A stretch of 24,242 nucleotides of DNA from Oopsacas minuta. Taxonomy: Eukaryota; Animalia; Porifera. The stretch's first letter is position 1; the number at the start of each line of letters is the position of its first letter. The stretch covers positions 1 to 24,242 of the forward strand of contig JAKMXF010000142.1 of NCBI GenBank assembly GCA_024704765.1, written 5' to 3'. Positions 4,852 through 23,724 of this stretch are shown here, piece after piece. The position numbers and the translations under genes were made by a program. The notes below the pieces were generated by a model. That model made no database searches. It saw only the letters and a program-made list of their open reading frames with translations, and was not told the DNA's origin.

Positions 4852-7800
4852 TTAGCGACAACCACAGGCAGCTACTTGCATATCCAGATACACCTTCATA
4901 ACATATCTTCTGGTAATAGGATCTGAATAGATTAAGGTTAGAGGATTGAGTTGTGTTGGAGTACAGCATACAGATGGTACAGAAGGCTCATTCAAATGAA
5001 ATAAAGAATTCTGTAAGATAGAATGATTGGTAGCATTGAAATGAGATAATAAGGGGATAGGACACATTCCATAGCAGTAATTAAGGTAGTAACCTTTTGG
5101 GTACAAAACCCAATTAGACCATCCAATTTCATTAAAACTAATATAAAGATTATGTTTCTGACATTGATCTGAGTCAGGAGGATAATCTGGAATGTCATTA
5201 GAGGAGCGTCTATTCCTAATAAAAACATCTAATCATCTCGCCATAATACAGTACAAATATGATTTAACAATTATTTATATTAATTAATTAAAAGTATCGT
5301 GTCAAATCACGGATAAGTTGGCAAGTATCCTAGAGACATGGATATTAATGAGAAATTATTTCACCCCTGGAGTGCACAAGAGTACTATAAATCAATAATA
5401 GTGGGGTTCCAATGCATCTATTACTTAGAGGCATTGTAAAGTTAAACTTTGGTTTAATCTTGAAGGTTAGTATCTAAATAACATTTTTGGACTGAGTAGA
5501 CAAACATCAGAAAGAATTGATGCACTCGGGGGTATGGACTTCGAGGGGACTAACTATTGCATGACTGTCCCTGTCATACAATAGTTTGTCCCCTCAAAGT
5601 AGGTACGACCGGACCATATATGGCAATGGATGGTCCCCATGTAGTGTAATGTACCCCAGAATAATCCCAATAATGAAGAATTAAGGGACTAATTCTCTAA
5701 AGAGATATATATAGGGCTTTCCCTGGTTGTGTTGTCCTCCAAGTTATATAATTGGAGTATATTATAACTTGATCTGGGTGTTATATGGGATATTATCTCA
5801 AATTATTTACTAATCAATCTTCTAATTATAGTATTTGTGGATTTCTATCTATTTGTATGTAACTGAGAGATGTTCAAGGGATTAACTTACATCTTTATTA
5901 TGAATTACATGTTTGTACTCCAGGCAAAATACTGAGTGAATTTAATAGAGTGACCCATTTGGCCTTGGTAGCCCTTGTAAAGCCTGCAATAAACATCGTG
6001 AAGAGCATTTAATATAATAAAAAGAGGGGAACCAAATTTTAAGGGCGAACCATCCGACCGGACCATTTAAAGCGGTGGACCAATAAAGCGTGACACTCCC
6101 CACCAAATGAAATATGTTACAGTATAGTGTATGAATAGTTGTATAAATTGGAAATACGACCTTTCGGGTAGAGGACGCTCTGAGCTACATTTATGCAAAT
6201 TTGAGCAAATCAAACGTATAAATAATTTTCGAGGTAAGATCATGCAAAGTGGCTGAGCCACAATGAATAGTGGCCTTGGACCACAGGACCCCAAAAGCCA
6301 CATTTTCGTATTTGGTTCAAATTGTCAGGATTAGTTCGTCTAGATGATGTGGACGTGGTTGGACACGTGTTTTTGAAGTGACAAACCTTTAACGTGTAGT
6401 AAACCCGTTTCGTGACATGCGTTATAGACCAGCTGATTACTTGAGGTTTATAGCACTCATTAATGTGTCATTGGTTAGTAAACTGATTTTTAGATGTGTT
6501 ACAAACCATAACAGTAGGTATCCATTGATTATTGACCAGATATATTAAGAAGCAGATACATGGATACATTGATGTGATCAAAGAATAAATTACCTAATTA
6601 GCACTTGAACGATTCAAATGGATAACGGGGCTCTGATTAACACACGGTCCTAAAAGTATGAATCTACTAGATTATCAAGTGCTAAATAAATAATCTAATT
6701 CAAACTTCAAAATTATCACTGAATAAGAAGAACCAAGAAACTGAATTGATCAGCTGATATATATATTGTGAAGTATTGTGGAATTATGGACCTTTAAGTG
6801 GCGGTTAGCCACTTAAAGGTCCATAATCCCAAAATACACGTACAATCAATATTTGCTTTGAGCCACGTACATATATCATCTATACAAACAAATTGTCAGG
6901 GTTGTATTCGCCTATGTATAGAATAGAAATATGTAGGTAGTTAAGATAAGAATACCGTTTTCTAGAAGATGGATCTTATATTGGAGATGCTCTTATAACC
7001 GTGTATTCTTATTAGCGTTACCAACAAGTATTAACATTATTTGTTTATTAAGAATTAAATCAAGAACCCTACTTTAGAGTGCCCCCTTCAGAAACCTTTA
7101 GGACAATCGGTCATTTTCCATAAACAGTGCTCAACAATTAATGTTTTACTTATATATCGCGGATATATATCTTTATATACTGGCACCTCTTGTCCACCTA
7201 AAAATTCACAATCCATGTCTCTAGATTCATGCTGTATTCAACAACGACTTCTATTATAGTAGCATTGTAATAATACAATACTTACCTGTGATGATGTTGC
7301 CAGTAAACACTTGAGGTTTGTTTATCTTGGGAATATAAAATAAGTTTCGCTGATATATCCAAAGTATATTCTTTGTCAGCCAAAATAAATAATGTTAATA
7401 ATCCGTCTCTTATTAACTTAGATAATTTCTTTAGAGGAATAAGATAATTCTTATTTGATAATAATTTCTTATCTGTAAAGAGATTAACGATATTTCCTTT
7501 AAAGACAGCTAGCACGGTTAGAGGATAGAGTTCAGTAATTTGATCTCCTAATATCTTAACATGAACATATCCAGTGATAAATTTATCACTCAGGAGGGAG
7601 ATATTAAAATTGTAAGTTTGAAGCAGATATCGATAACCAAAATCCCCTAAAAGTAAAGAAAAAGATCCGTATTATATATGTACAAAGCTAACTAGAAGAA
7701 CCCTTATTTTCACAACATGGGTATTTTCAGTTAACCGCAGCAATTGTCTGCTAACCGGTAGCAGGTCTACCGAATATCAACTAGTCTTGTAAAATCTGTG

Positions 7801-9093
7801 AGAATTTTAAACTATATAGTATTTAGAACAAATATAACCGAGAAAGAGGTACTCATAGGCTAAATTGGTCACTTTTACAAACGAAATCAGGAAACACAGA
7901 AACAAAAAATGAAAAAATCAGAAAAGATCGTAAAATGCAATATAAATAACATGTTTAGCCAATACAGAGCTATTTCTTGTAATCAATGAATTCAAACATA
8001 ACCTGCTAGGTTACAAGCCTCACCGGTTTTACATGACTACTTGCCATTAGGTAGAAAAACTTTGGTAATTTATTCAATTTTCCCATTTTGTGAGTTGAAT
8101 TCTATAAAATTGTGAAGTGATGCATATGGAATTCAGATTCGGACTCAGCATAGTTGATAGAACTGCTAGTAGCCCATAAACCAAGGGAAAAGGAAAAAGT
8201 CCATACCGAAGGAAGTCTGTCGGGGGGATGGCAGAAGGAGATCTGAATCTGATTCATAGGGCAGAACCAGCGGAGCAAGACGTTATCCACAAAGGGACAC
8301 CTCCAGGTTGGCATCGTAACACAATAGACTGGAAATAAGCAGCCTTATGGGCCTTTTCCTGTGACCCATCCCCTTGAAGTATCGTACAGTAGATGGGGTG
8401 ATGCATGGGCTACTACAATGCGGCTATACATGCTGACAAATTATAGTAAAATATAAGAATACAATTTTATAAATCCCATTAAAGAAAAAATAATCCTTCA
8501 ATGTTTGCGAATTGAACCTTTTTAGGGTAAAACGTCCTAGGAATCAATTTAGATTTATTAAAAGTTCAAACAGCCATGCTTCATCTAGTTTAGGCTCAAT
8601 TCAAAATATGACATCATAGTGTAGAAATTCATTAGTGAATTTTTAATGAATATCGCATTACTTACATTCCATTAATATATTATTTCCGGGAAACCAATAT
8701 GACCGTTGGACCCCCAAATGGTCATATTGGATACAAATACAGATTCTTAAAGGTATGTATAATGGAAACAATCAACAACAAACCTCTCAACGTAGAGATA
8801 GGATACAAGGTCTGTATAGAATTCGCGAATATTTTCTTATTTCCATAACCAAGCAAATTCATCGCCTTCATAGGATCCTGTTGAGCTCTATTAATCACCT
8901 TATTATATAGACGTACCATAAAACTTGGTAGTTGAGAGTCGTCTGGCCAGTTTGAATGGTTCTTGTCCATATTTGTACCGTCCATCACACCAAGTTTAGA
9001 AGCCAAAATAAGAGATACAGGAGATGTCATCAAAGTATTTGATGAAGTATAATGTAACAGATTCAAGAGACATAGAAACACAAGTATGAGCAT
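4852..9093 (-). CDS. TGF-beta superfamily ligand, BMP-like; 3 exons (9093-8784, 7646-7286, 5215-4852), 344 aa
   Basis: The exons join in frame through GT-AG introns (phases 1 and 2; 1035 nt total). Signal peptide MLILVFLCLLNLLHYTSS; prodomain motifs LPSFMVRLY and ANSIQTL; furin site RNRR/S. The mature domain has 7 conserved Cys: CQKHNLYISFNEIGWSNWVLYPKGYYLNYCYGMC...NATNHSILQ...CCTPTQLNPLTLIY...DMQVAACGCR. Confidence 0.93.
5572..6095. mobile_element. TGTCA...TGACA-terminated non-autonomous element (Ginger/TDD-like or solo LTR) in TGF-beta intron 2
   Basis: TGTCA start, GCGTGACA end, sub-terminal GGACC/GGTCC motifs. Flanks GTCCC/CTCCC (4/5 match). Similar end at 10426. Confidence 0.4.
6773..6837. 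repeat. 65-bp near-perfect palindrome (30-bp stem, 5-nt loop)
   Basis: ATTATGGACCTTTAAGTGGC-GGTTA-GCCACTTAAAGGTCCATAAT is a perfect 20-bp stem that extends to 30 bp with 2 mismatches. Confidence 0.9.
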
Positions 9094-9299: not shown

Positions 9300-9460
9300 T
9301 ATACGAATTTTCGAATAACACGAACAAATATTTACACAAAATCAGGTCCCTACTATGTTTTTCAATTGATATTGCTCCAGTTAATACTACGTACTCCGGA
9401 GAAGAAGTATAAAATTTCGAAGGCCCACTCGTGTACGCATTTAAACGAAGTTGGACTGTA
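9300..9460 (+). repeat. Diverged internal segment of the Harbinger-like MITE family
   Basis: ATACGAATTT...ACGAACAA...AATCAGGTCCCTAC...TTCAAT.GATATT.CTCC...ACTCCGGA is shared with 21073-21170. Confidence 0.55.
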
Positions 9461-9829
9461 TTTGAAGTGCAATGCTAACTTCCCAGTTAGTGACGGACGT
9501 CAAGGTTTTCTGATGACAGAAGGTTACTAAGATCATTGTTAGCCTGTTAGGAAAAAGTGTGCCTAGATTTCTTTTAGGAAGAAGAGTGATTTCGTAAAAT
9601 ATTTTTGAATAACTCCCAAAACATGGAAAGAGATATTGGCAAGGTAAGGCCAGGTTCGTTAGCTAATTCGATAAAAATGTCATATGCTCTGCCAGTAACT
9701 CTCCAAGATACACCCGTCAGGAACCAAGGGGTGTCTAAAATCTCCGTCCACGAGGCAGACCATGCTGGCCGAAAGATTTCAAATCCTCGTGTCAAATAGT
9801 GGAGATAAAATGAAACCATTAATTGATCT

Positions 9830-10426
9830 CCTCGGACCAATTTTGGTTGCCAAATTTGCTCTGGGAGACCAGTTTTAGCCAGCCAAATTGGTCCTGGGCA
9901 GGACAGTATTAACTCATTTGAGTTGGCAAAATCAACTCATTTTCTTGAATGAGTTGAAAGTTATCGAATGAATTAGTTGTATGAATTGATAACGCAAATC
10001 GGGACTGGAGGTATGAAAAGTAAGTACACTATCTGTGCCAAGAATGGTAAATCATCTAGTGAATTGATGTAACAATTAATTTTGTTTCCACCGTAACAGC
10101 ATTGCTTCAGTAATAATGTCTTAAACTTATTATTTCATATTTAACTCGTATCTTGGTTATAAAATGAGTTAGCAAAATCAAATCATTATTTAAAATGAGT
10201 TGAATGAGTTTGTAGCGGCAAAATGAATGAGTTGAACTATTTGGCTAAAGAAAAGTGAATAAGTTAGTAGACAAAAATGAGTATTTTTGCCAACTCAAAA
10301 TGAGTTGATACAGCCCTGATAGGAGGGGACCATTTTTGGCAACGAAAAGTGGTTCGAGGGAGCAAATTTGGCAGCCATGATTGTCCAGCCGGACCACTAT
10401 TGGCCCATACCAATTTTGGCGTGACA
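9830..10426. mobile_element. Inverted-repeat element with GGACC/GGTCC units (host of a nested MITE)
   Basis: 9830-9898 is a diverged reverse complement of about 10321-10395 (GG.TGCCAAATTTGCTC...CCA.TTTT...GCCAAA.TTGGTCC). The right end is GGCGTGACA; the left end is uncertain (possibly TGTCA at 9790). Confidence 0.5.
9899..10318. mobile_element. hAT-like MITE nested in the preceding element
   Basis: TIR CAGGACAGTATTAACTCATTTGAGTTGGCAAAA versus rc CAGGGCTGTATCAACTCATTTTGAGTTGGCAAAA, with internal AATGAGTT subrepeats. No clear TSD. Confidence 0.65.
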
Positions 10427-10751
10427 AGGCGGTTCTAATACGATACATAGTTTTCTATTGCAGAGGAATACAAATAACAATAAACATACATTTTCATTAT
10501 TCGTTATTTAGAAGTATTAGGCATAGTTTTTGACGAAAAGATTTCAAGAAAACCATCAAATAGAGATTGAAAGATGATATAATAACAAAATCGATGTGGT
10601 AATATAAAATCCAAGCTGTCAAGATAAAGCATATGAATTTTATTGAATAGTAGTTGATATAAGCATAGCCTACGAAAGATAAGGCCTGATCACTAAGTCC
10701 ATTTCACTGGACCAGTGATAAAAGGAAGTAGATATATTTTTACCAATACTA

Positions 10752-11207
10752 AAGTTCAGAGATCCCACATTTTCTATTCTGAAAGAAAAGATGCAAGCAG
10801 TTTCTGAGTTGATTCATTAAACATTTGAGAGAGAACTGAAAGGTAATGGGTACAACTTTATTCGAAATTTCTCCAGGAAATACCTGAGGTGTGTGAATCA
10901 TTGAAAGAGGAAGAACGGAATACAATATGCCTTCAAGCAGGTTTATCCCTGGTCGAACGTGAAAAGGAAATTGCAAACAAGATATCCTGGGTAAAGAATA
11001 TCAGCAGGCCAACAACAAAGGTACATTTTCTGCTCAACCATTTAGATGAGTTCTTAAACTAGTTAGCACTGGAAGGCAATACCCTATTGGTCTGGTTTTC
11101 TTTTCGGAGCAGGCGTTGGAAGTAGTCACAGTGATTTTACCAAATTTTCGAAGGAATATACAGGAAAAAGTAGTTTGCTAAGGGTAACCATAAAATATAA
11201 TGCATAA
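10752..11207 (+). pseudogene. Degraded DDE transposase C-terminus, Transib/Chapaev/RAG1-related
   Basis: Across frameshifts and stops: GYNFIRNFSRKYLRCVNH*, NISRPTTKVHFLLNHLDEFL (about 10997-11055) and GLVFFSEQALE + SSHSDFTKF (about 11089-11150, 1-nt deletion). Motif order and spacing resemble the T-K-x-H..H and SEQ..E..H region of this group. Recognised from memory, not by search. Confidence 0.5.
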
Positions 11208-11516
11208 ATAACATCAAAAAAGCAAGAAAGGAAAGTCTGTAATTGGAAAATATTAGTAGTGTAGAGTCTATAAACTCCTAATGTATAATAGTTGCATAAT
11301 GAATTCGGAATTAGCGTGGAATAATTATATAATCAGGAATAGCGAATAAGTAATCCAATGCGTAAAATATAATCTATATTTAGTATGTATATAGGACTTA
11401 TATCCGTTACAATGTATCTGTGGTTTCTATTCAAAATCAATTATTATTGTATAATAATACCAATGCATAAAGTGAATATTTTAATGCGCTACAAGTTCAG
11501 TCTAATATAGTGTAAT

Positions 11517-12156
11517 CAGTGGCGGACACTTGACGAAATGTTTGGGGGGTGAAATTAGTTGGGACTCATCACACTTTCAATATTCTTAGTCAGTGCCCCA
11601 ATCAATCTTCTTATTGCCAGCGGCTGATTTTGTGTTTACATGTATCTTTTGTATTTTATATTAGACGTATCGTATATCATATGAAAAGGACCCAACCTTT
11701 TCAAAGTTCTCGCCATCTCGAAGACCTTACATGTGGGTACCGCAACGGTGGAAAGGAGTTTTAGTGGATGAATCGCATATTAAGCTGGGCTCGAAGCAGC
11801 TTAGATTTTCGTTGGCCAGTGACTTTATGCTGCTTTCGATGAACAAAGACATTTTAAAAAGGCTAAATTGGACAAAGTGCTTGATCGTTGGGTGAATCAA
11901 AAGTCCGAGTTGCATCATTAAACTTTTTTTCCTTTATTAAGGCTTTTGAACACTTGAGGATTAGTAGTGTCTTTTCTCAATTTCGCTATATAATTATGCT
12001 ATTTTGGTGTTGTTGTTTCTATTACAATTTGTACTAACTCCTTCCACTTTTAAAGTAAAAGATTCCTTGTGTTTCCACTTATTTACTCAAATTTCTTTAA
12101 ACTTTATTCTTTCGAAATTATTGGGGGGTGGCCACCCCCCCTAGTGTCCGTCACTG
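11517..12156 (+). mobile_element. hAT deletion derivative, 640 bp, retaining a hATC dimerisation-domain remnant
   Basis: TIR CAGTGGCGGACACT / AGTGTCCGTCACTG. 8-bp TSD AGTGTAAT/GGTGTAAT (7/8). Internal KVLAISKTLHVGTATVERSFSG* followed by NRILSWARSSL and LASDFMLLSMNKDIL at about 11703-11880. Confidence 0.88.
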
Positions 12157-12694
12157 GGTGTAATATCATTGTATATAGCTAAAGAATATCTAAATATAAA
12201 AACATATGTTGCACAACATTTTTCGATAAAATTATTGCAAGTACCAGCGGCTTCCAAATCTCGATAAATCGAAAAAATTTATTATTGCTCGTCTAACTTG
12301 AATGGGAATTAGCATGAAGACTTTATTATAATGGTTATTCTAGAATCTAGAGCTATATTATATCCCGGTATTGAAAATTTTGAGTAGTGTTTTAGGCTTT
12401 GATAAACTAAATTATTACTAAGTCATTCACTTGTATCAACACATTTACAATGATCTACACATTTTGATATGAATTCTTGTATTACTAAATCTCACGGCAT
12501 AGTATATTTTTGGAAAATATAGAGATAGATTAGACTTCTAGATAACTCTCGAGTTACTTGTAACATAGTGATTCGTAGGCATAATTTGTGATTCATTTGG
12601 GGTAAGATGATAACCCTTTGCAAATAGGTATATTCAATAGAGAATCCTATTTGTTGAAAACATAATTGTAGGAGAAATTAAATTTTGTTTTAGA

Positions 12695-13195
12695 ATGGAT
12701 TTGAATGTGAACTTAGTTACAGGACGGTATTTACAATTGAAGCTGAATCAGCCATCTTCCCATGAGTTAATCCTTGAGAAGATATCTGATTTGACCAAGA
12801 TACCTCCCAATAAGCAAATGCTCGTGAAAAATGGGAAAGTGATTAAAGAAATCAACCCAATAGTGATCGAGAGCCCAGGAGATATCTGGCTCATTTCTAA
12901 AGTGAGGGCCGGCGTGATAGTACATGTAAAACTATTTAGTGGGGTAATCCTCTCTGTAGAAGTTGAATTGGACGAGGATACCATTTTCAATGTAAAGGAA
13001 AAGATAGCTGAGAAGCAAGATATTGAAACAAGTAAGCAAGCTCTATTCTTCAAAGATAGATCACTGGATGACGATGAGCTAAAATTATCTGCTGCTGGAA
13101 TTCAAAAGGGTGATGTACTGAATTTAATGTTAAAAACTGATGACAGCAGTGTAAGAGTTGAAGAAAAATCTTCCAGTTGTTGCTGTTTCCTATAA
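12695..13195 (+). CDS. Tandem di-ubiquitin-like protein with C-terminal CaaX (CCCFL), 166 aa
   Basis: Domain 1 (aa 1-73) keeps ubiquitin register at G10, K29, I30, I36, P37, P38, Q41, L43, G47 and K48, and ends KVRAG. Domain 2 has VK..G...EVE...DTIFNVKEKI..K..I...Q.L.F...L.D...LS...IQKG..L.L.L. The tail is SSSCCCFL*. A pyrimidine tract and AG just before the ATG suggest a 5'UTR intron. Confidence 0.88.
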   Translation: MDLNVNLVTGRYLQLKLNQPSSHELILEKISDLTKIPPNKQMLVKNGKVIKEINPIVIESPGDIWLISKVRAGVIVHVKLFSGVILSVEVELDEDTIFNVKEKIAEKQDIETSKQALFFKDRSLDDDELKLSAAGIQKGDVLNLMLKTDDSSVRVEEKSSSCCCFL

Positions 13196-14290
13196 ACTAT
13201 CGGGTCTCGAATTTGATTTATGTTGTCATTATAACCACAGCTACTATGCGATATTTTGTATTACATTTGTTAGCTCTTGTTCCTTTACTATGTCTTCAAA
13301 TTAAATATTACTAATTATTACTATATAGTGCGCTTGTTGTAAGGTAGCTTCACGACTGAGGTATATGCAAAATCAGAAGCGCGAACAGGTCCAGATTAAG
13401 GTAAGTGGGACCATATACCGTATGTGTAGGTAGGCTCTCACTTCAATTTATATTAACTAACTTAATAATATCAATTCAGGGCATCTGCATCAATCATGTC
13501 TGTAGAACCGGCACTTTTAGATACCTACCAAGTAGCGTGCCGTTAAGGGCCGTGTAATTGACTGCATTACTAATACTTACTTGCGCCAAATGAATTCCTC
13601 GGATTCAGGTCTGCGCCACCTAGCATCAAACACTGGCGGCCCCACTGCCGCCAAGCACCTAGATCAGTGGTTTAAAAAGTACACAGAGCATCCGCGTTAG
13701 GTACATGGTCTTAGACACATATTAGTTACATAATGAATATGTATTAGATAGATTAGTCATTACTGTTAAAATCTCTTTAGGTACATACTGTAATGACTGT
13801 GTATTTTGAGTATTGTTGCACAGTTCGTATTGTATGAGAGGTGGACTATCTGCTCTATGGAATGGTAGTTTCCCTACTCAGGTTACTATAATAAGGATGA
13901 AATTTGGCAGACTATGGTTTATGGTAGAGATGAAAAAGTACAAATTCTAGAAAGGGACGAATAAATGCTAACTTCGATAAAAACTATCCTCAAACATAAC
14001 ACAGGCCAACATTTTCTTGGCTGATAAGTTTAGACTATTTCTAGGGTATATCGGGGTCATTGAGTTCCAAAATGGCACTAGTTCTGGTCAATTGGCTCTA
14101 CTTTTCGTGATATTGTATAATTATGTTTTTCAGCATCCGTGAATCTGTGTTCACTGATACCATATAGTATGTATGTATTACCTTATAACTAGAATTGAAT
14201 GGACGTAATAAGCAGATAATTTGAGATATAATATGATCTGAATACTTANCATGAATAAATTTGGGTGTCATCAGGTATATAATGCATATT

Positions 14291-14377
14291 TAAAGCTTCC
14301 TCGGATTTAGCGACAAATCGGATATAACGACCTTTTTTGCCTGTCCAAACGAGTGTCGTTAAATCCAATGTTTACTG
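14291..14377. mobile_element. Very short pogo/Tigger-like MITE candidate
   Basis: CCTCGGATTTAGCGACA versus rc CATTGGATTTAACGACA; the right end is ...TTTACTG|TA; the left end is degenerate. Confidence 0.4.
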
Positions 14378-14383
14378 TACTCA

Positions 14384-14529
14384 AGTATGCTGAGTCTAAA
14401 TATTGTAAACGACATCAATATTATTTAATCTCAATTGTTGTTTGTCTGTTTTATTGTCCGTTGAATACCTCAAGGAGCAATGCGATGAGTTCATCGCGAA
14501 GCGACGAGCCAAAGGCTTGTATATTCTAA
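14384..14529 (+). repeat. Dispersed repeat (both family segments contiguous), ending in a hairpin plus CTAA
   Basis: Matches 564-645, then 171-227 (rc) and 18968-19024. Hairpin ACGAGCC-AAA-GGCTTGT is followed by ATATTCTAA. Confidence 0.65.
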
Positions 14530-15051
14530 ATGAGAAGCTTGAAAACGCGAAATTCGGATTCAGCGTACATTGTTACGCCATTGTAGTCGTTAAGAGCAAG
14601 TTTCTACCATTATTTCAAGATGTTAACTATTGTTTACTTGATAAAAACAACAATTTATTTACATATGATTAATTCAAAAGTGTGAAAATCGGATACAACA
14701 TATTCGATAGATTTAGTCAAGTTATATTGAATTCTGTTTAGTAACTTGCTAAACACGAGTAATGCAAAGTTATGACATCTCAGGGCTTGGGTATTCGAAT
14801 TGTAAACAACATTCCATAAATCCTTTCCTTGACAACAGACAAACAGACAACACTGGAAATTTAATAATATAGATTCAACACTTTTTCCAATACTTTTCTT
14901 TTATACACTAAACTAGGAAAACACAATGAGTAAATATTACAAATAATTGTAGAAACATAGATAATCTAACCAAAAAATAAAATCATACCATTACACCTTA
15001 TATAAATTTGGAGACACTTAGGAATCCAAGTATAGTACTTGTACAAGCTTA

Positions 15052-18000
15052 CTACATCATCAAACACTTCATCCCGGTTGTAGCCTGATTTTCTCCGTAG
15101 TACTTATTTTGGTACTCCTCCATATCCTTGATATAAGAAATAGGAGGCCATCTATTATTAATCACGAATGTAGCATGTTCTTCATCCAAACGCTGAACAT
15201 CTCCCTTAGACTCAAATACAGAATAATTAGTTGATATAAAGTGCAAACACCAACCAACAAGCTGTTTTGCATTATAGGCTTGTGCAACTCTTAGCAACTC
15301 TGGGAGATCAACGATTGATCCGGCAATACGCTCAGTGGTCTCTCTCTCTACATATTTTGTAAGCGCAAGTTCGCATCTAGCTACAAGGCGAGGTAAACAA
15401 TATTGATTAGCTGCCGACATTATTCCAACTAAATCAACTGATCCATCCACAACAGTAGTCATGGAATATATAAAATGGAGTAATTCACGAAATACTTGAA
15501 CTTCGATTTCTGTAATTTCGATCACATTAGATTGAGATTTGGCTAAATTTCCAATGAGCAAAGCTCTCAGTACTTCACTCCTTGCAACAATAACACATCG
15601 ATGAGCAGGAATTAGTTCTTCGCCTACTTTGAATTGCATATCAGAGAGTGTGGATTTACCAACAAATAATTCACTTGCAACCTGTAAAATAATAAAGGAA
15701 ATAAAATCAAATATTTTACTGAAAGAGCAAAGGCAGTTAGTGCACACACTCCATTATATCAAACTAATATCAATCTTTGCATTATTGCATAACTTTTGGG
15801 AGGCCTGCGTGGTCAAATACAACTCTAGTTAGCAATGGAAAGGATAAGTGTTCACACAGCTTCTCAAATCTATATTCAACTTAGCAGTGGCATACCCAGT
15901 ACGGCTGATGCGGTGTTTCTGTAAAACTAATCGCTCTGTTATACCATCTTTATCTCTTCGAAAATATACAATTCGTTAATAATTTCATTATTTTTATATA
16001 ATATAATGAATAGACAGTTTGTAAGTTTGATTCCAGCGGTACTAAGTTAACCAATGCAGCGAAGCAGGACCAATTACCAAACTGTTGCGCCGCTGTAGGA
16101 CAACAATTGAATACTGAAATTTATCGCCGTACAACTTTTCGAATGGATATGCCGCGCTTGTAGGAGGTGTAATATAGCAATTTTCGCATGCCTTGATATG
16201 TATTCCTACAGGTGGAACAATATTCGTGAACAGAGATACCAATCCTAGCGAAAATATGTTCCATTTTCGATTGATATATTTTAGATGGATTCGACGTCGA
16301 TTGCATTTCTTTGAAAATAATTTGTATATAGAAAGTAAAACTTTATTCCTCTAGAAATATATTAATATTAGGCTTGCTTATTGAATCAATTTTCGCTGGA
16401 CCAGGGATAAAAGGAAGTGGAATTGGTGGATTTATTTTACACATCTCTGGGATGGGAAATATAATATTCGCTGATAATAAGAAACTTTCACAATTTCATC
16501 CGAAAAATGTAATATTGATATGTAACAATTTCCAAAATTATTTGTTCATTTTATATTCATAAAACAACAAAAAATTTATAAATGATAAATTAAGAATGAC
16601 AAATTCGTAATTCATCATATGTAAATTTATTGTTGTTTTTATGAATATAAGGATATCTCTTACGAATGTGACGTAATCATGAATATGCATATAACTAGAT
16701 TCAACTAAAAGTATGGGTAAGTTATTAATACTGGTAAGAACCATAGAATCGAATTTAAGTGTTTACAATCGAATCTAAGGAAGAAAGAATTCGGAAATAT
16801 TTTGTAGAGGAAATACACAAACCTGTCCAGCAATTTCATTCATATAAGTAGAGATGCTAGGGTTAAGATCATCAGATTGATCCTCAATGTTTTGGCAAAA
16901 CTGAGACATTTTGGGTAATGAGAAGAAATCTGCAGCCTTTATAGTTTCGGGAATCATATCGTCTTGGTCCAAGATAAATACTGTACCAGTGTACAAAAAT
17001 TCTATTACCCTACGTAAGCCCAAATCTGAGAATATCTCACAATCTACCTCAAGTACTGGATATTCCTTACCATCAATTTCCTCAACTTTGAAGCTTATAA
17101 ATCCACTAACCCTACCTTCATTTATCATAGAAGCAGAGACACGTTGTTGTCCTTGACTCTCTGTATCGAGAAGTAATTTGGGTTTACCAACACGAAGTAA
17201 CTATGAAAAATAGACAATAAATATTATATTTAATAATGCTGAGAGCAATTAAACAATGCGATCGTAATCGTAATCAGAATTTTAATCAGTGGCGGATTTA
17301 GAGGAGGGGGCAATTGTCCTCCCCACCCCTTTTCCAGGAATAGGTGCCAAAACATATTTTGAAATTATGTGGTTTTGTTTACGATTATATATTCAATATA
17401 CCCGCATACATATAGTGTTATACACTATTGGCTGGTACTAGAATACAATAGACTCCGGTTAATAACGACCAAAATCTGGAATAAATGAGTTTCTTCTATG
17501 CGAGTCAACTGTATATATTCACTATCGTATAAAATGACAATTATAGCATACAGTAGAACCTCTATAAGTGGGGGAGGTTAGGCCGGCGAATCTTCAAATA
17601 ACCCCCACATTTCCCATTTATAATTTCTAATGTAAATGTCCTTAAGCTTAGTTTTTTTGAGTCAATATGCATAACCACTTCCTCCAACGACTGTTTTCCA
17701 ATGCTATTTGATTATAAGAATATGTCCAAAGATGTTGGATGAATTTTCTCCTGAGAAACCCAAAAAATTCAATTCATCATAGCGATAAATACGTGTATTC
17801 CTTCCAAATTTCACACAAGAATTGATTATTCAATAAAATTTGTCTTATAATTCCCCACTTAAAGATGTAATTTCAATGGTGTGAGGCATGATTTATCTAA
17901 ATAATGCCCCATTCCACATTCCCCGCTTATAGAGGTTCGTTTCTATGGAAATGAGTGAAGGTGGGCCAAAACCCCACCTATAGAGGTTTCACTGTATATT

Positions 18001-21000
18001 AGAGCTAAATTGTCCTGGAAAATGAGTGAACATAGCACTAGATGGATTTTTGGGTGTTTAGGAATGATATAAATTCTGGGGAAGTTTACCCTCCCAGACC
18101 TCGGATTATACAATTACTCGCTAAGCTCGCTTCTCCTTCCTTCCACAAATCCTGGATCTGCCACAGTTTTAATCATTGAGTAGCGTCGTAATCGTTCAAA
18201 AATCTAAATAGGAATTGACCCCAACTCTGATTCAGAAATTAACAAGCGGTCATATATCAGTAAACAGATTCACTGGTAAGATTGGAAAATTAAATAATAA
18301 ATTTACCTGTCTAAAGAAATGGCTATTACAGGCAAGGATAATTCTGTTGAGATAGTGGTAGTGATCCAGGCGTTTAATGATGAAATCTGAGGCTGTAGGA
18401 GATTCTAGCAGATACTTCATATCATGACCATATGTTATTAGAGGAATATTTATCCAAGGTGCTTTTCCTGCAGGTGGCATATCAGGAGGAGGAGGAATTG
18501 CAGCTTTGGCCGTTTCGTCAGTTTGTCGCCGCCAGAAAAAAGAAAACTTCCTACAAACATTAGGAATAAATGTATAATCAATATTATTAAATCAAAATTG
18601 TTGTTTGCTTGCCCGTTGTCAAGGAAAGGAATTAAGGTATGCAATTTTAAAATTGTCGCATAACTATATATTTATTGTGTTTATTAAGGAAGTAAATATA
18701 ATTCAATAAAACTTCACTAAATATATCGAATTTGCGGAATCCGATTTTCACACTTTGGGATTAATCATATGTAAATTTATTGTTGCTTTTATGAATATAA
18801 AGTAAACAAATTAGCCAAATCCCAAAATATACGTACAGCCTTGTTCTAAACGTCTGCCCAGGGGTAAGTAAGTACGCTGAATGCGAATTTCGCATTTTCA
18901 AGTTTCTCATATGTAATTTTATTGTTGTTGTTATGAATACAAAGTAAACAAACTTCAAAATTTAGGTTACCTCGAGGCGCAATGCGCCGAGTTCATCGCG
19001 AGGGACGAGCCAAAGGCTCGTGTATAATAAAACAAAGATTATATTGCAGCTCATGTTTGGAGGGAGCCACACGGAAGCAAGGTTTGTGATTTCCGAATGC
19101 ATGCATGTCCAAAGTATCATGGGAAAAATGTTCCTAAAGAAGTAACAATTTATACAAGGATAAATTAAAATGTGACATGGACACATGCCCAAGAATTCAC
19201 GATATTTAAAGATGAGCAAGATCAAAAGATAAAGAGTTCAAGAAGACATTTCAAGTGTAGTGCCTAGGAAGTAATACAATTCTGCACCCCATTTGGTAAA
19301 TACTCTTCAATGATGCGAGTGCAAGTCTTCAATAGGCTTAAAGACCTGAGACAGCGAATTGTGGGTCAATCGCGCTCATTCCCGCTACGCTCGTTCGCGC
19401 GAATAATAATTAAGGAGGTAAAGGGGACTACATGAAATTACTTTAAAACTAATGCTAACGCCAACTGCCCAAATTCGAGCTGTTGATGACTTGCTTGGAA
19501 GTTTAGTCGAGCTAATGACAACGCTAAATTCGACCTAACGCACCCCTTATTAGAATAATGGATTTTGTTTAATTAGATCAGAAAAGTCTCAATTCGGCAG
19601 ATCCTAATCATGGCTTACTTTTACACGATTGTGTATCCCACTGAGTATGCGAAAAATAGAAGCCTGATTTAGTTTATAATTTAAATATAAACCAATGCTC
19701 TTACCATTTGCCAAATATAATTTCAAGGGGCTTTTGTATATGAGGAATTCATTGAGACTGCTTAGCAAGTACTCACGGCCGCCCTTCATGTGGTTTAGGC
19801 TCTTCTTAACGATGACGTCACCATTTCAAAGAATTTAATCATTTGGAAGGATATTTTATTTAAAATAGATTTTATTTAAAATAGATTTTATATATTTTTA
19901 TAAAGTAATCTGAATGAATTATTTTACTATTTTTCTAAAAAAATAGACAAACACTCAGAACAATGTTTGAGCAAACGAGAGATTCATTATAGAGAATGTT
20001 GGGTATAACTAAACTGTAAATAACTTAAGAAAATGATCAAACCTTGCTGAAGCTGAAGAAGCCTTTTTCTGATGTCCATCAATGCCACATTGAATTGCTT
20101 TGTCAAAAACTGTACGTAAATTGGATTGTGTGAGAGAACTACACTCTAAATGACCTGATGCACCAGTCTTCTTGATAACTTCATCAGCATAGGTTGAAGA
20201 AACAAATCTAAAAAATATCAAATCACTGTTTGTGCCTAACTAATTTTAAATTATCTCAAGATATATCTGACCCAATCTATGCTTTCTAGTATATGAGCTA
20301 GATCTACTGTCTACCTCCAAAAGGACCCCACTCTTGGAAAATACTCCATCATAATTGTGGTACAGTACTAAGGGTTGGAAATCTAGACATATGTATATAT
20401 TTCTGGATGACTATTTCGCTATTAACAAATTATGAAAATTATCAGATTCGTAATTACGCACTCAATTATATCGCACATCGTCCATGCCATTAGGGGATTT
20501 CCCAATAGGAGCTGCACTAAAAATAGGTATACGTAGAGAGGTTCTGAATGGCCTGGGTAATAACGAACGGAATTCCGAATTTCGCAATTTATAGTTTTTA
20601 TAATATAATGAATTTTACTAGTACAGTGGAACCTGAAAATTACTACCACAGAGGGAGGGAAGATAAAATATGGCCGTAATTTCTGATATTAATGAGCTGT
20701 AGTGTAGTACAGTTTTTTGCAATAGAAAAACCCCATACTCTCATTCGAAAAGGTGACTTTCATTAATCCGAAAAATGACCTTTCCTCGAAGATAGAAAAG
20801 CTGAGCTATATGTAAGTTATTTGATTAATAATAGTGTCAATTAGTAGTTGAACGGGACTATAAAATATGGTCGTTAAGCGGGTTCAAATTGGATACCTTG
20901 AGCTCCGAGCTCATCCCGAAACTACGTACGAGCCCAAAGCTAATATAAGGCCATGTAAAATATATTACTTGTTTCTCAGCCATTTTTTTCTGCGAAATAA

Positions 21001-22033
21001 GGGCGGGGGGCGGCATTTTATTTTTATATTTTGCTTAGCGTAATTTTACTAATTTATTAAAATTATCTCGTTAATACGAATTTCTGATAAGACGAACAAT
21101 ATTCGTACATAATCAGGTCCCTACAACCGTACTTCAATGGATATTACTCCGGGTTTGTGAACTCCGGAATGGTGAATAAATTTTAACCGTACGATACGTT
21201 GGTGTTCGTATTAAGCTTACACTGGATATGGAAAAACTAATATTCACTTCCTCTCTATAATCTGAATTATTGTACAATTTAAATAATAATGACAAAAATT
21301 TAGTGCACACGGGTCCCGACTAAAAACGGTATGTCCCTCCCCATAAACCCGGACTGAGCCTGTCCAAACTCAGAACCTGCTTTTAAGTGTCCTGACGAAA
21401 TTATGATGCCATTCAGACCTTTTTGGATTTTCGAAAAATCACATGGTTAGCCACACTGCTCAGCGACCTAGCTAGCGAAGGGCGCTAGTGTTAAATAATT
21501 AGCTTGTTTCGAAGACGCTCATCTGCGAATATATGTATTAAATAAAGATATGTATTAAAATAAAAAAAATTACCGAGGAGGGAGATTAAATGGGGCGGGC
21601 GGGGATGATAAACAAGTATATTATTTTATATGGCCTAATTTATAATAGTAACTCACTTCTCAGGTTGAGCTGTTCGTAAATCACTCTTTAGTCCGATTAC
21701 TAGATACGGAGTGTGAGGGCAGTGATGAGTTATCTCAGGGATCCACTTTGCGGTTATATTTTCGAAACTATCTTTACTAGAGACATCATAACAGAGTAGA
21801 AAAATGTCAGTCTGTGGATAAGAGAGAGGTCTCAAGCGATCATAGTCTTCTTGTCCCGCTGTATCCCAAAGTCCAACATTATACGGTTTACCATTATACA
21901 TAATATTGGCAGAATAGTTATCGAACACCGTTGGTACGTAATCTCCAGGGAATGCATTTGTTGTGTATGAAATTAGGAGACAAGATTTCCCAACAGCTCC
22001 ATCACCAGCAACGAGAAGTTTCAAATTCTGCAT
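15052..22033 (-). CDS. RhoBTB: RhoBTB protein, RacA-type: Rac-like GTPase + Pro-rich linker + 2 BTB + CaaX; 5 exons (22033-21657, 20207-20043, 18550-18307, 17200-16823, 15681-15052), 597 aa
   Basis: All junctions are GT-AG and phase-compatible (2,2,0,0; 1794 nt). GTPase motifs [42 protein letters not shown] and ECSSL. Linker [21 protein letters not shown]1 ...VIEFLYTG. Junction [14 protein letters not shown]|[20 protein letters not shown]2 [19 protein letters not shown]...[10 protein letters not shown]. RhoBTB tail [16 protein letters not shown]...NNRWPPISY; ends GMKCLMM*. Confidence 0.92.
16616..16650 (+). repeat. 35-45 bp motif repeated at 18766-18810 and 18908-18952
   Basis: CATATGTAAATTTATTGTTG(T/C)TTTTATGAATATAA. 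The latter two copies are a local direct repeat 142 bp apart. Confidence 0.7.
17287..18166. mobile_element. hAT-like MITE in RhoBTB intron 3, containing a nested pogo-like MITE
   Basis: TIR CAGTGGCGGAT / ATCTGCCACAG (2 mismatches). Direct repeat TTTTAAT abuts both ends. Sub-terminal G/C runs. Confidence 0.7.
17551..17994. mobile_element. pogo/Tigger-like (Tc1/mariner superfamily) MITE, 444 bp
   Basis: TA|CAGTAGAACCTCTATAAGTGGG...CCCACCTATAGAGGTTTCACTG|TA, with TA target duplication. Confidence 0.85.
18968..19024 (+). repeat. Dispersed repeat with GC hairpin (copy 3)
   Basis: TACCTCGAGGCGCAATGCGCCGAGTTCATCGCGAGGGACGAGCCAAAGGCTCGT, with a perfect ACGAGCC/GGCTCGT stem. Confidence 0.65.
20949..21635. 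mobile_element. PIF/Harbinger-like MITE, 687 bp, in RhoBTB intron 1
   Basis: TAA|GGCCATGTAAAATATATTACTTGTTTCTCA...TGATAAACAAGTATATTATTTTATATGGCC|TAA. TIR family shared with 1471-1784. Confidence 0.8.
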
Positions 22034-22351
22034 ACGTAATGATTGTATTTGAAATAAAAAGCTTAATCGAAAATATAATAAAATCTTGATTTTATTACTT
22101 AATATATGCCAAATATTGAAGAACAAATATAGATTGAAACGAAAATAACTAAAGCTAAATATAGATATATATTTAGAGTTTTTAATAGAACTAAATAATT
22201 ATAAAAAAAGATTTCCTAATAATTCTATCCAATACTAATACGTAAGTTATCAGGAATCAATCCTAAATGTATAGAAAATACTCTAATTATAGTTTGACAC
22301 ATAAATTAATTCAGGGGAATTTGTAATATTAATTAATGCTATGATGTACGC

Positions 22352-22460
22352 CAGTGCTTCTAAACCTGAGGTCTGCGACCCATAGGGGGCCCGTGGCCCC
22401 CATAATTGCATAATTGACTAGAGTGGGTCCGCGGGTGAAAAAAGGCTGAGAAATACTCTG
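22352..22460. mobile_element. Short hAT (Charlie/MER5-like) MITE upstream of RhoBTB
   Basis: CAGTGCTTCTAAACCT...GGGTCCGCG...AAAAGGCTGAGAAATACTCTG. Flanks ATGTACGC/GCGTACTC (5/8, degraded TSD). Confidence 0.55.
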
Positions 22461-23497
22461 GCGTACTCAATAAGTTTCACGTTGTTGGTGTTGCGCAGTT
22501 AATGTCGCACTACATGCTTCATTCCCCGCCATCTATCCCACTTATGGGTAGAGGTGTAGCATGTAGCTAGGCCCGCACAAAGGGTGCTGTAAAGGAGTGG
22601 CACATAAGCTCCATGTTTGGGTTCCTGGGGGATCAGGACCCCCCAGTTTAGTGGTAAAGACCGTCTTTTTGCGAAATTTACATAGAGGTAGCACCAATTT
22701 CGCATGGTGGACCCCAGGTCTGATTTTATTTCCTAAAACTTACATATGCCACACCCAAGCTGCGCCTTTGCTTATGGGCCACCCGTGCGCCAGTAGTCTT
22801 TAATTATCGTAGATTTATAATAAATACTATCGTGCAAGAAATATCAAGAAAATTGAGGGACAGGGGAGGTTGATCAAAAACAATCTAGAAATTTGATTCG
22901 TCATAAGTCAGAAACCACGTGAGCGATTGTCCTGAAATTTTGACAGAAGTGAAGACATGATGGTACCCAGCTCTACAATAAATTTCGGATAAATTGGTAG
23001 ATGTTGATACCATTTTACTAATTTCAGCTTACAATGGTCTGAAAAAGTTCAGCTGATGCGCACCATCTTGGCTAGATCTCTGTCACTTATACACATTATA
23101 TTTTCCTTGTTTCCTTCTGATGGATTTCTACAATTAACTTTCAAACTGGAATTCAAGTTCAATTATATTCTATTATCCAGGAAGGATACCAAACCTGACC
23201 ACATTTTTATGACAACATTCGGGATATGAAATAACCCGATATAACAGTAACCAAGTTTTTTAATACAAGAATTAACCAATTGGTTTGGATTTGAACATTT
23301 TATAATAAAAGCGGGTTATTCTATTATGTGGTATGAAAATAATCTGGATCTACTGATATATGGATTTGTCTAAAAAATATAACCTAGTTAAAGTGTATGT
23401 CAATCGTATTATTCTAACCAATGGATTTAAAATTGAATAGAGTTTGTTAGAAAACGGCTTCTACTGAATGTCAATTAATAGATTGCTGAGGGGAAGT

Positions 23498-23536
23498 TTC
23501 GCTAGTCAGAATTTCGAAGTTGTCATTAGTCAGAAT
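23498..23536. repeat. Opposite arm of the small inverted-repeat element at 4065-4103
   Basis: TTCGCTAGTCAGAATTTCGAAGTTGTCATTAGTCAGAAT, 38/39 identical to rc(4065-4103). Confidence 0.75.
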
Positions 23537-23610
23537 CTACTTTTCCGACATGTCGCGTGGCAAATGAGGCCAGGCAAAAACCTTTTATTCGATTTATTAT
23601 AAACCCGTAC

Positions 23611-23724
23611 CATAGCATTCTATACACTAAGGCAATGGTGCTGATTAATGGACTTGGACCAGGGATTGGGTAAGTCAGTTCTAAGGAAATAATGGAGATA
23701 TATTAGTTGCGATAAAATTTAAAC
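23611..23724 (+). mobile_element. 114-bp terminal inverted repeat of the P/Galileo-like element (terminus at 23611), interrupted by mariner
   Basis: Begins CATAGCATTCTATACACTAAGG and is preceded directly by CCCGTAC (23604-23610). 112/114 identical to rc(3708-3821). Confidence 0.75.

What the first reader, a model, noticed from the sequence alone, without database searches (positions are those of the whole stretch)
12695..13195. Tandem di-ubiquitin-like protein with a lipid-anchor tail instead of di-glycine
Seen: two ubiquitin folds; the junction is KVRAG-V (no GG); the C-terminus is SSSCCCFL. Established: ISG15 and FAT10 are di-UBLs ending in GG. UBL3/MUB proteins are single UBLs ending in a prenylated CaaX. 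This protein combines both plans. CCFL predicts geranylgeranylation, and the adjacent Cys could be palmitoylated. Domain 1 keeps K29, K48 and a V8/V44 patch in ubiquitin register. Inference: it could be a membrane-tethered linear di-ubiquitin mimic, a chain primer, or a decoy/regulator for E2s, DUBs or ubiquitin receptors. I cannot place it in a named family.
Basis: partly seen in the sequence, partly recalled or inferred. Interest (0 to 1): 0.7.

Follow-up and report, generated by a model that had tools for sequence, protein, structure and literature searches.

The report
Glass-sponge lipid-tailed double ubiquitin-like protein
Glass sponges carry a conserved small gene for two ubiquitin-like domains that cannot be conjugated in the usual way. 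It ends in a cysteine-rich lipid-attachment signal, so it is probably a membrane-tethered ubiquitin look-alike that arose independently of the known UBL3/MUB proteins.

Summary
Window 12695-13195(+) is an intact single-exon ORF of 166 aa. It has two ubiquitin-fold domains, an ...RAG-V junction, no C-terminal Gly-Gly, and the ending ...SSSCCCFL.

It is not a chance ORF or a decayed polyubiquitin:
- There are nine relatives of 49-70% identity and about 166 aa. One is a complete ORF in a Vazella pourtalesii (glass sponge) transcript. Earlier scan notes give the window genome as Oopsacas minuta, another glass sponge.
- All ten tails are Cys-Cys-a-a-(L/V/I), with the stop in the same place.
- dN/dS is 0.10 for domain 2, 0.31 for domain 1, 0.64 for the linker and 0.07 for the tail.
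- One of four public runs of this organism shows transcript-like depth on the ORF alone.

Both domains derive from ubiquitin: 32-33% identity to linear di-ubiquitin against 17-20% to ISG15. The UBL3/MUB domain model matches none of the nine family proteins scanned. The tail copies the animal UBL3 'C-CAAX' plan (CCVIL).

Best reading: a glass-sponge-restricted, ubiquitin-derived, non-conjugatable di-UBL held on membranes by geranylgeranyl plus palmitoyl groups. It would act as a tethered ubiquitin-like docking or regulatory surface. Lipidation and function are inferred.

This is a new variant of a known kind.

The parts
12695..13195 (+). Complete single-exon CDS (166 aa plus stop) of the di-UBL C-CaaX protein
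   Evidence: ORF list and sequence. Nine relatives of 162-173 aa as called, at 49-70% identity. Overall dN/dS is 0.21. Between species, nucleotide similarity is confined to this ORF. The start context is A at -3 and G at +4, with an in-frame stop 18 codons upstream.
12695..12913 (+). Domain 1 (residues 1-73): a divergent ubiquitin fold with a 3-residue deletion at Ub 53-55. A hydrophobic patch V/I/L8-V/I44-W68-I/V70 is conserved and the Trp is invariant.
   Evidence: 21-30% identity to ubiquitin in register. AF2 block pLDDT 79-88 over residues 1-70, with strands and helix in beta-grasp order. dN/dS 0.31.
12905..12913 (+). Junction R-A-G (residues 71-73), in the register of ubiquitin R74-G75-G76. 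(R/K)-A-G is found in all ten sequences.
   Evidence: Alignments. The Ala and Gly codons change synonymously (GCC/GCT/GCA; GGC/GGT/GGG) while the residues stay.
12914..13135 (+). Domain 2 (residues 74-147): a ubiquitin-like fold and the best conserved part. K27, K29 and K33 are invariant, K48 is replaced by an invariant Arg, and there is no LRLRGG tail.
   Evidence: PF00240 best stretch 76-148. 33-39% identity to ubiquitin. Rmsd 0.7-1.1 A to ubiquitin, Z about 15. dN/dS 0.10.
13136..13177 (+). Acidic/polar disordered linker (residues 148-161) between domain 2 and the tail
   Evidence: pLDDT below 50 from residue 150. dN/dS 0.64, with length conserved but sequence variable.
13178..13195 (+). 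C-CaaX tail C162-C163-C164-F165-L166 plus the stop. C163 is the predicted prenyl acceptor. C162, and C164 where present, are candidate palmitoyl or thiol-bonding sites.
   Evidence: C162 and C163 are invariant. The tails are CCCFL (6 species-level sequences plus the window), CCYCL, CCCFV and CCCFI. Cys codons vary TGT/TGC, the stop varies TAA/TGA/TAG, but its position is fixed. dN/dS 0.07.
13300..13305 (+). ATTAAA, a likely poly(A) signal 105 nt after the stop
   Evidence: Sequence. AATAAA or ATTAAA lies 105-156 nt after the stop in 6 of 8 orthologous loci. Depth in run X4 collapses after about 13255-13285.
12664..13285 (+). Approximate extent of transcript-like coverage in run X4
   Evidence: X4 word depth is 9,387-21,051 in bins 12664-13254, against about 62 before and 46 falling to 3 after. 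X1-X3 are flat at about 46-193. An adapter-like loose end follows 13285. No joints lie inside the ORF. The data are contigs, so the ends are approximate.

Best explanation
This is a real, expressed, single-exon gene. As far as the databases show, it is restricted to glass sponges (Hexactinellida).

It arose from ubiquitin itself, probably from a head-to-tail di-ubiquitin unit, and diverged into a fixed, non-conjugatable di-UBL. The inter-domain Gly-Gly became Ala-Gly, and the second domain lost the LRLRGG tail altogether. E1-dependent conjugation through a C-terminal glycine is therefore impossible for the full-length protein.

In place of that tail it carries a disordered linker of about 14 residues and a C-CaaX box (CCCFL). 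By the established CaaX rules, Cys at -4 with X=Leu makes a GGTase-I substrate, so C163 is most likely geranylgeranylated. The flanking cysteines C162 and C164 would then be S-palmitoylated, as in CCaX proteins such as brain Cdc42, or C162 might be used like UBL3 C113.

The lipidated protein would sit on the cytosolic face of membranes and display two ubiquitin-like surfaces. One is the conserved hydrophobic patch of domain 1, equivalent to the ubiquitin I44 patch and centred on an invariant Trp. The other is the strongly conserved acidic loops of domain 2. These would recruit or regulate ubiquitin-binding partners (E2s, E3s, ubiquitin receptors) at the membrane. In function it would be convergent with UBL3/MUB.

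Shown here: the gene, the fold, conservation, selection on the tail, transcript evidence and ubiquitin ancestry. Inferred: lipidation, membrane location and partner recruitment.
For: Gene reality:
- The ORF is intact.
- Nine relatives of 49-70% identity sit in at least 7 assemblies, and P0002 is a complete ORF in a Vazella pourtalesii Trinity transcript.
- dN/dS is 0.12-0.26 on unsaturated pairs, and dS is saturated between the deeper lineages.
- Position is conserved: the window shares an upstream ORF with L009 and L004, and a TGF-beta exon with L004. An eIF3a gene lies downstream in six loci of four other assemblies.
- Run X4 shows depth 150-400 times that of the flanks on the ORF only, and no joints. 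The Oopsacas genome project made RNA-seq and DNA-seq in one BioProject.

Ubiquitin ancestry:
- PF00240 matches all 9 of 9 members.
- Identity is 32-33% to linear di-ubiquitin against 17-20% to ISG15.
- Domain 2 lies 0.7-1.1 A from ubiquitin.

No conjugation: there is no GG anywhere, and the junction is A-G in all sequences.

Tail:
- C162 and C163 are invariant, X is L/V/I, and the stop is fixed.
- Tail dN/dS is 0.07 against 0.64 for the adjacent linker.
- The tail is disordered, as CaaX substrates are.

Precedents:
- Animal UBL3 ends in C-CAAX (CCVIL). C114 is geranylgeranylated and C113 is used for bonding (PMC10511055).
- Leu at X directs GGTase-I, and CCaX proteins are prenylated and then palmitoylated (PMC9868626).
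- MUBs tether and inhibit E2s at the plasma membrane (PMC4996978).
Against: - No lipidation, localisation or binding data exist for any member.
- The a1/a2 residues (Cys-Phe, and Tyr-Cys in one orthologue) are less canonical than aliphatic pairs. No prenylation predictor was available.
- The inter-domain geometry is not defined (pTM 0.48), so a specific mimicry of linear di-ubiquitin is unproven.
- The hydrophobic patch of domain 2 is eroded (V70 becomes M/T/S/E).
- The invariance of Ala-Gly at the junction is not explained by a pure linker role.
- RNA evidence in this species rests on one run of unrecorded kind, read only as contigs.
- The restriction to glass sponges rests on searches that cannot see distant di-UBL kin scoring below about 142 bits, because of the polyubiquitin flood.
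- Only two of the source organisms are actually named.
Confidence: 0.6

Rival explanations
1. Precursor model. A dedicated protease cuts after the invariant (R/K)-Ala-Gly. This would release domain 1 as a free UBL, possibly conjugatable and ending in Gly, and leave domain 2 as a single lipid-anchored UBL similar to MUB. It would be comparable to ubiquitin fusion precursors and to UFM1 maturation after Val-Gly.
For: A72-G73 and the basic residue before them are invariant in all ten sequences, despite synonymous codon changes. Neighbouring positions vary. The segment keeps exactly the length and register of the ubiquitin tail 71-76 and is predicted to be coil.
Against: By established knowledge, G75A in ubiquitin is poorly accepted by general DUBs and E1. 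Most orthologues have Pro at the position of Ub L71. No protease or E1/E2 partner was identified nearby. Domain 1 is the less constrained domain (dN/dS 0.31).
Confidence: 0.13
2. UBL3-like thiol modifier. The Cys just upstream of the CaaX cysteine (C162) forms reducible bonds with substrate proteins. This would sort them to membranes or vesicles, as reported for UBL3 C113.
For: The C-CaaX arrangement is identical to that of animal UBL3 (CCVIL), and C162 is invariant.
Against: The domains are not of the UBL3/MUB type: PF13881 matches none of the 9 family proteins scanned. The chemistry of UBL3 bonding is itself unresolved. An upstream Cys is equally explained as a palmitoylation site.
Confidence: 0.12
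3. The Cys-rich end is not prenylated. It would be only S-acylated, or bind a metal, or form disulfides, and the CaaX-like spacing would be incidental.
For: a1=Cys and a2=Phe, or Tyr-Cys in one orthologue, are non-canonical. Part of brain Cdc42 (CCIF) escapes prenylation and is doubly palmitoylated.
Against: The stop is fixed exactly 3 codons after the invariant Cys in 10 of 10 sequences, across lineages with saturated dS. X is always L, V or I. A plain palmitoylation cluster would not need this spacing.
Confidence: 0.1
4. Decaying polyubiquitin copy or processed pseudogene whose tail resembles CaaX by chance.
For: The gene is intronless, derived from ubiquitin and only 21-39% identical to it.
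Against: The ORF is intact in every assembly. dN/dS is 0.1-0.3 with saturated dS. The tail and position are conserved, a complete transcript exists in Vazella, and depth in X4 is transcript-like.
Confidence: 0.02

Closest known systems
UBL3 / MUB (membrane-anchored ubiquitin-fold proteins)
   Same: Both are ubiquitin-fold proteins without a C-terminal Gly-Gly. Both have a flexible linker followed by a conserved CaaX box with an extra Cys directly upstream: animal UBL3 has CCVIL, this family has CCCFL. Both have X=Leu, predicting geranylgeranylation.
   Different: UBL3/MUB has one UBL domain of the PF13881 type. This family has two domains of the ubiquitin (PF00240) type, and PF13881 matches none of the 9 family proteins scanned. 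No UBL3/MUB chain appears among the top structural matches. UBL3 is pan-eukaryotic, whereas this family was seen only in glass-sponge-type assemblies. It works like UBL3/MUB but is not a member.
Linear (Met1-linked) di-ubiquitin / polyubiquitin
   Same: This is the best sequence and fold match. Residues 2-147 align without rearrangement at 32-33% identity, and the junction is in the same register.
   Different: The junction is RAG-V rather than RGG-M, and the last domain has no LRLRGG. The domains are only 21-39% identical to ubiquitin, against near identity in true polyubiquitin. K48, K63 and K11 are lost or variable. The protein has a lipid-anchor tail.
ISG15 / FAT10 (tandem di-UBL modifiers)
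   Same: Two tandem beta-grasp domains in one polypeptide of about 160 aa.
   Different: ISG15 and FAT10 end in Gly-Gly and are conjugated by E1-E2-E3 enzymes. This protein has no terminal Gly. It is only 17-20% identical to ISG15 structures, which is lower than its identity to ubiquitin. ISG15 and FAT10 are vertebrate lineages (own knowledge).
CCaX dual-lipidated proteins (brain Cdc42 CCIF; RalA/RalB by own knowledge)
   Same: The C-terminal Cys-Cys-a-X motif. In the precedent, the first Cys is prenylated and the second palmitoylated.
   Different: The precedents are small GTPases. The cargo here is a di-UBL, and there is a third Cys upstream.
Other uncharacterised poly-UBL proteins ending in CaaX (P0108, a lamprey 'polyubiquitin-like isoform X2' ending ...SSCVIL; P0066 ending ...KCIVS; P0079 ending ...KCVIS)
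   Same: Strings of divergent ubiquitin repeats whose last repeat lacks Gly-Gly, followed by a short linker and a CaaX box.
   Different: They have 6-9 repeats in 621-822 aa. They are no closer to the sponge family than plain ubiquitin is: 23-33% identity and 27-53 bits, against 76.6 bits for di-ubiquitin. They are apparently independent derivations and none is described in the literature searched.

Membership tests
UBL3/MUB | UBL domain of the UBL3/MUB type (Pfam PF13881, Rad60-SLD_2) | tested here: not met
   PF13881 was matched by none of the 9 family proteins scanned, even at E<=10, while PF00240 was matched by all 9. No UBL3/MUB chain is in the top 50 of Foldseek or VIA.
UBL3/MUB | Conserved C-terminal CaaX box, with a nearby upstream Cys (C-CAAX in animals) | tested here: met
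   C162-C163-x-x-(L/V/I)-stop in 10 of 10 sequences, with tail dN/dS 0.07. The UBL3 pattern is taken from PMC10511055.
UBL3/MUB | Single UBL domain architecture | tested here: not met
   Two beta-grasp domains.
UBL3/MUB | Prenylation-dependent membrane anchoring; E2 backside binding with the lap-bar loop | not testable with these tools
   Needs cell biology or biochemistry. The mechanism is known from PMC4996978.
Polyubiquitin (conjugatable ubiquitin precursor) | Ubiquitin-family domains (PF00240) | tested here: met
   E=1.1e-17 with 2 stretches. All 9 members match.
Polyubiquitin (conjugatable ubiquitin precursor) | Repeats joined by ...LRLRGG-M... and a terminal Gly-Gly exposed by DUB processing | tested here: not met
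   The junction is (R/K)-A-G followed by V/I/A/T. Domain 2 ends ...LK-TDD... with no Gly-Gly.
Polyubiquitin (conjugatable ubiquitin precursor) | Near-identity of each repeat to ubiquitin | tested here: not met
   Domain 1 is 21-30% and domain 2 is 33-39% identical to ubiquitin.
ISG15/FAT10-type di-UBL modifiers | Two tandem UBL domains | tested here: met
ISG15/FAT10-type di-UBL modifiers | C-terminal Gly-Gly for E1-dependent conjugation; specific sequence kinship | tested here: not met
   No terminal Gly. Identity to ISG15 chains is 17-20%, against 32-33% to di-ubiquitin.
CaaX / CCaX prenylation substrates | Cys exactly four residues from the C-terminus, in a flexible tail, with X determining the transferase (Leu for GGTase-I) | tested here: met
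   Cys is at -4 in 10 of 10 sequences. X is L in 8, V in 1 and I in 1. The stop position is fixed. The tail has pLDDT below 50. The rule is taken from PMC9868626.
CaaX / CCaX prenylation substrates | Actual covalent prenyl (and palmitoyl) modification | not testable with these tools
   No experiment or prenylation predictor was available.

The most novel reading that the evidence does not exclude
The gene encodes a two-in-one precursor. Cleavage after the invariant Arg/Lys-Ala-Gly would release domain 1 as a new conjugatable modifier ending in Ala-Gly. Domain 2 would stay on the membrane through its geranylgeranyl and palmitoyl tail as its receptor or regulator. Alternatively, the intact lipid-anchored protein is a hard-wired, DUB-resistant mimic of a linear di-ubiquitin signal, permanently displayed on the membranes of the syncytial glass-sponge tissue. 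Either would be a ubiquitin-type signalling device with no described counterpart.
Probability: 0.15. Interest if true: 0.8.

Novelty: new variant of a known kind. Interest (0 to 1): 0.6.

Why it matters
Lipid-anchored ubiquitin-fold proteins are currently known as one ancient family, UBL3/MUB. These proteins tether and inhibit E2 enzymes, support MARCH-dependent ubiquitination and sort cargo into vesicles.

This sponge family shows the same solution evolving a second time: drop the Gly-Gly, then add a linker and a C-CaaX tail. Here it started from ubiquitin itself and in a tandem format. That is a natural experiment on which features of a membrane-tethered ubiquitin surface matter.

The family also gives a compact, testable protein of 166 aa with no introns. 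It could be used to ask whether a fixed di-ubiquitin-like unit on a membrane recruits linear-chain or I44-patch readers.

Unrelated poly-UBL proteins with CaaX ends exist in lamprey and in environmental eukaryotes. This hints at an overlooked class of prenylated poly-ubiquitin-like proteins.

Tried and rejected
1. The word-indexed search with the family profile added only the tandem paralogue P0010.

2. The index-free profile search of 1.84 billion representatives was flooded by multi-repeat polyubiquitins. All other top-150 hits were at least 308 aa with at least 3 stretches. It shows only that no second cluster of two-domain relatives scores 142 bits or more. Weaker di-UBL kin cannot be excluded.

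3. The ESM Atlas gave generic ubiquitin, ISG15 and polyubiquitin clusters at scores of 0.89 or below. These are leads only and were not used as evidence.

4. I looked for the eIF3a gene that lies directly downstream in six loci of four other assemblies. It was not found in the 11 kb downstream in the window, so synteny is conserved only on the upstream side in this species.

5. No run is recorded as RNA for this organism. X4 is interpreted as RNA-derived from its depth profile only.

6. Pseudogene, ISG15-like and UBL3-orthologue readings were rejected.

7. I did not test whether glass sponges also keep a canonical UBL3. I had no tool-derived UBL3 query, and no way to restrict a search to these genomes.

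8. The literature searches found no description of a di- or poly-UBL with CaaX.

Full report
**Observation**

Window 12695-13195(+) is an uninterrupted ATG-to-stop ORF of 166 aa (sequence). Pfam finds the ubiquitin family (PF00240) at E=1.1e-17 with two stretches. Residues 2-147 align colinearly with solved linear di-ubiquitin chains.

An AlphaFold2 model built on the family alignment gives two beta-grasp domains, with block pLDDT 70-90 and 128 residues between 70 and 90. The tail from residue 150 is disordered. The overall pTM is 0.48, so the relative orientation of the domains is undefined.

Foldseek ranks linear di-ubiquitin first at 32-33% identity, ahead of ISG15 at 17-20%. VIA-align places domain 2 on ubiquitin at 0.7-1.1 A over 72-77 residues, Z about 15.

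**Is it a gene?**

The word-indexed search found seven full-length relatives of 49-70% identity and 162-173 aa. The profile search added a tandem paralogue.

One relative, P0002, is EukProt EP00800 from Vazella pourtalesii, a TransDecoder 'complete' ORF from a Trinity transcript. The identical protein is encoded by Vazella-associated metagenome scaffolds. Earlier notes of this scan identify the window genome as Oopsacas minuta, another glass sponge. I did not test that identification independently.

In every assembly the gene is a single open frame. Two shorter or longer gene calls are start-codon artefacts of the gene caller, because a normal ATG gives 166 aa.

Nei-Gojobori dN/dS is 0.12-0.26 for the unsaturated pairs, and dS is saturated between the deeper lineages. 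Between species, nucleotide similarity stops at the ORF borders.

All loci show a purine at -3 and G at +4, and an in-frame stop 2-24 codons upstream. Six of the eight have AATAAA or ATTAAA 105-156 nt after the stop.

Position is conserved. An unnamed ORF (window 8722-9093, minus strand) lies upstream here and in L009 and L004, and a TGF-beta exon (window 4858-5106, minus strand) lies upstream here and in L004. In six loci from four other assemblies an eIF3a gene follows directly downstream. It is not within the 11 kb downstream in this window.

**Expression in this organism**

No holder run is recorded as RNA. The four holders come from one sample and one study.

- X1-X3 have flat depth across 10300-16200, apart from a repeat.
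- X4 has word depths of 9,387, 21,051 and 18,350 in the three bins covering 12664-13254. The depth is about 62 before and falls from 46 to 3 after.
- X4 also has high depth over the BTB ORF at 15052-15747.
- No joint lies within the di-UBL ORF, and an adapter-like loose end follows 13285.

The Oopsacas genome paper reports RNA-seq and DNA-seq libraries in one BioProject (PMC10280926). I therefore read X4 as the RNA library. This is an inference from contigs, not from reads, and the transcript ends are approximate.

**The tail**

All ten sequences end Cys-Cys-x-x-(L/V/I)-stop:

| Tail | Where |
|---|---|
| CCCFL | the window and six other species-level sequences |
| CCYCL | one orthologue |
| CCCFV, CCCFI | the tandem pair |

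C162 and C163 are invariant. Their codons switch between TGT and TGC. The stop codon is TAA, TGA or TAG but always sits three codons after C163. Summed over seven unsaturated pairs, dN/dS is:

| Region | dN/dS |
|---|---|
| Domain 1 | 0.31 |
| Domain 2 | 0.10 |
| Linker (148-161) | 0.64 |
| Five tail codons | 0.07 |

A fixed distance from a Cys to the C-terminus, in a disordered tail next to a freely evolving linker, is the signature of a CaaX box. Leu at X directs GGTase-I. Cys-Cys-a-X proteins such as brain Cdc42 (CCIF) are prenylated on the first Cys and palmitoylated on the second (PMC9868626).

Animal UBL3 ends in the same 'C-CAAX' (CCVIL). C114 is geranylgeranylated and C113 is needed for reducible bonding to substrates (PMC10511055).

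**Ubiquitin register across the family**

Domain 1:
- It keeps a hydrophobic patch: V/I/L8, V/I44, an invariant Trp at the position of Ub H68, and I/V70.
- It has the invariant motifs KNG (Ub 45-47) and PG-IWL (Ub 64-69).

Domain 2:
- K27, K29 and K33 are invariant. K27 pairs with D52 in ubiquitin, so this may be structural (own knowledge).
- K48 is replaced by an invariant Arg, K11 by Val, and K63 is variable.
- V70 becomes M/T/S/E.
- The most conserved segments are GVIL(S/T)VEV-LDED and K-x-R-x-L-(D/N)-D-D...LS(A/S)AG, which are acidic loops.

A role as acceptor for K48, K63 or K11 chains is therefore not supported.

The junction (R/K)-A-G is invariant, with synonymous codon changes. It sits exactly in the register of Ub R74-G75-G76. 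This is unexplained by a pure linker role and keeps a processing model alive.

**Relation to known families**

The UBL3/MUB domain model PF13881 matches none of the nine family proteins scanned, even at E<=10, while PF00240 matches all nine. The family is therefore not UBL3/MUB, although its tail and its lack of Gly-Gly follow the same plan.

It is not a polyubiquitin: it has no RGG-M junction, no terminal GG, and only 21-39% identity to ubiquitin.

It is not an ISG15/FAT10-type modifier: it has no terminal Gly and is closer to ubiquitin than to ISG15.

The index-free profile search of 1.84 billion representatives gave 5,912 hits at E<=0.001. The top 150 are multi-repeat polyubiquitin-like proteins plus the family's own representative (P0002, 302.6 bits). 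No other two-domain protein scores 142 bits or more. More distant kin cannot be excluded.

Literature searches found no description of a di- or poly-UBL with a CaaX box.

**A by-product**

Among the 150 hits, three poly-UBL proteins end in canonical CaaX boxes after a last repeat that lacks Gly-Gly:
- P0108, NCBI XP_078740965.1, 'polyubiquitin-like isoform X2' of Lampetra fluviatilis, ending ...SSCVIL.
- P0066, from a TARA metagenome scaffold, ending ...KCIVS.
- P0079, from Logan assemblies, ending ...KCVIS.

A fourth, P0045, ends ...NCCCCCLLLLY.

They are no closer to the sponge family than ubiquitin is. The architecture therefore seems to have arisen several times.

**Mechanism and confidence**

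| Claim | My confidence |
|---|---|
| Real, selected, transcribed gene for a ubiquitin-derived di-UBL with a functional C-terminal Cys motif | about 0.95 |
| The motif is a lipidation signal (geranylgeranyl on C163, plus or minus palmitoyl on C162/C164) that tethers the protein to membranes | about 0.75 |
| The tethered protein works as a non-covalent ubiquitin-like docking or regulatory surface for E2s, E3s or ubiquitin receptors, like UBL3/MUB | about 0.4 |

Three rivals remain: cleavage at RAG to release domain 1, UBL3-like thiol bonding through C162, and palmitoylation only. The pseudogene reading is refuted.

**Verdict**

Noticed in passing
P0108 (NCBI XP_078740965.1, Lampetra fluviatilis), P0066 (L014:3001-4866, TARA metagenome), P0079 (Logan), P0045 (L013:3001-5118): These are unrelated multi-repeat ubiquitin-like proteins of 621-822 aa. 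Their last repeat lacks Gly-Gly and is followed by a short linker and a CaaX box (CVIL, CIVS, CVIS). P0045 instead has a poly-Cys end (NCCCCCLLLLY). They may be an overlooked class of prenylated poly-UBLs, and no paper was found.
   Followed up: partly
L001:5679-6176 and L001:8001-8498: The most divergent assembly carries a tandem pair of the di-UBL gene with tails CCCFI and CCCFV. dN/dS between the copies is 0.45, so constraint has relaxed or the copies are diverging after duplication.
   Followed up: partly
window 15052-15747 (-) and 16775-17128 (-): Two BTB/POZ-domain ORFs lie downstream (PF00651 at E=1.1e-20 and 5.6e-05). The first also has very high depth in run X4 only, so it is probably strongly expressed. 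BTB proteins are Cullin-3 adaptors. A link to the di-UBL is only a guess, because these genes are not syntenic in other species.
   Followed up: partly
window 14043-15027: Depth in this stretch is 100-600 times the genomic level in all four runs, with many internal joints and loose ends. It is a high-copy repeat or satellite-like element between the di-UBL and BTB genes.
   Followed up: no
window 4858-5106 (-) and 8722-9093 (-): A TGF-beta ligand exon (PF00019, E=1.8e-18) is 82% identical to the one upstream of the L004 orthologue. An unnamed 123-aa ORF is conserved upstream in L009 (65%) and L004 (51%). Together they form a conserved upstream neighbourhood.
   Followed up: partly
L004, L005, L006, L009, L011, L012 downstream of the di-UBL; window 13200-24242: An eIF3a (PF22591) gene follows the di-UBL directly in six loci from four other assemblies. 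It is absent from the 11 kb downstream in this window, so there has been a rearrangement or insertion in this lineage.
   Followed up: partly
window 21653-22126 (-), 929-1285 (+), 3048-3440 (-): A Ras-family GTPase exon (PF00071, E=7e-40), a C3HC4 RING-finger ORF (PF13920, E=9e-11) and a THAP-domain ORF. The THAP ORF is 37% identical to one near the L003 copy.
   Followed up: no
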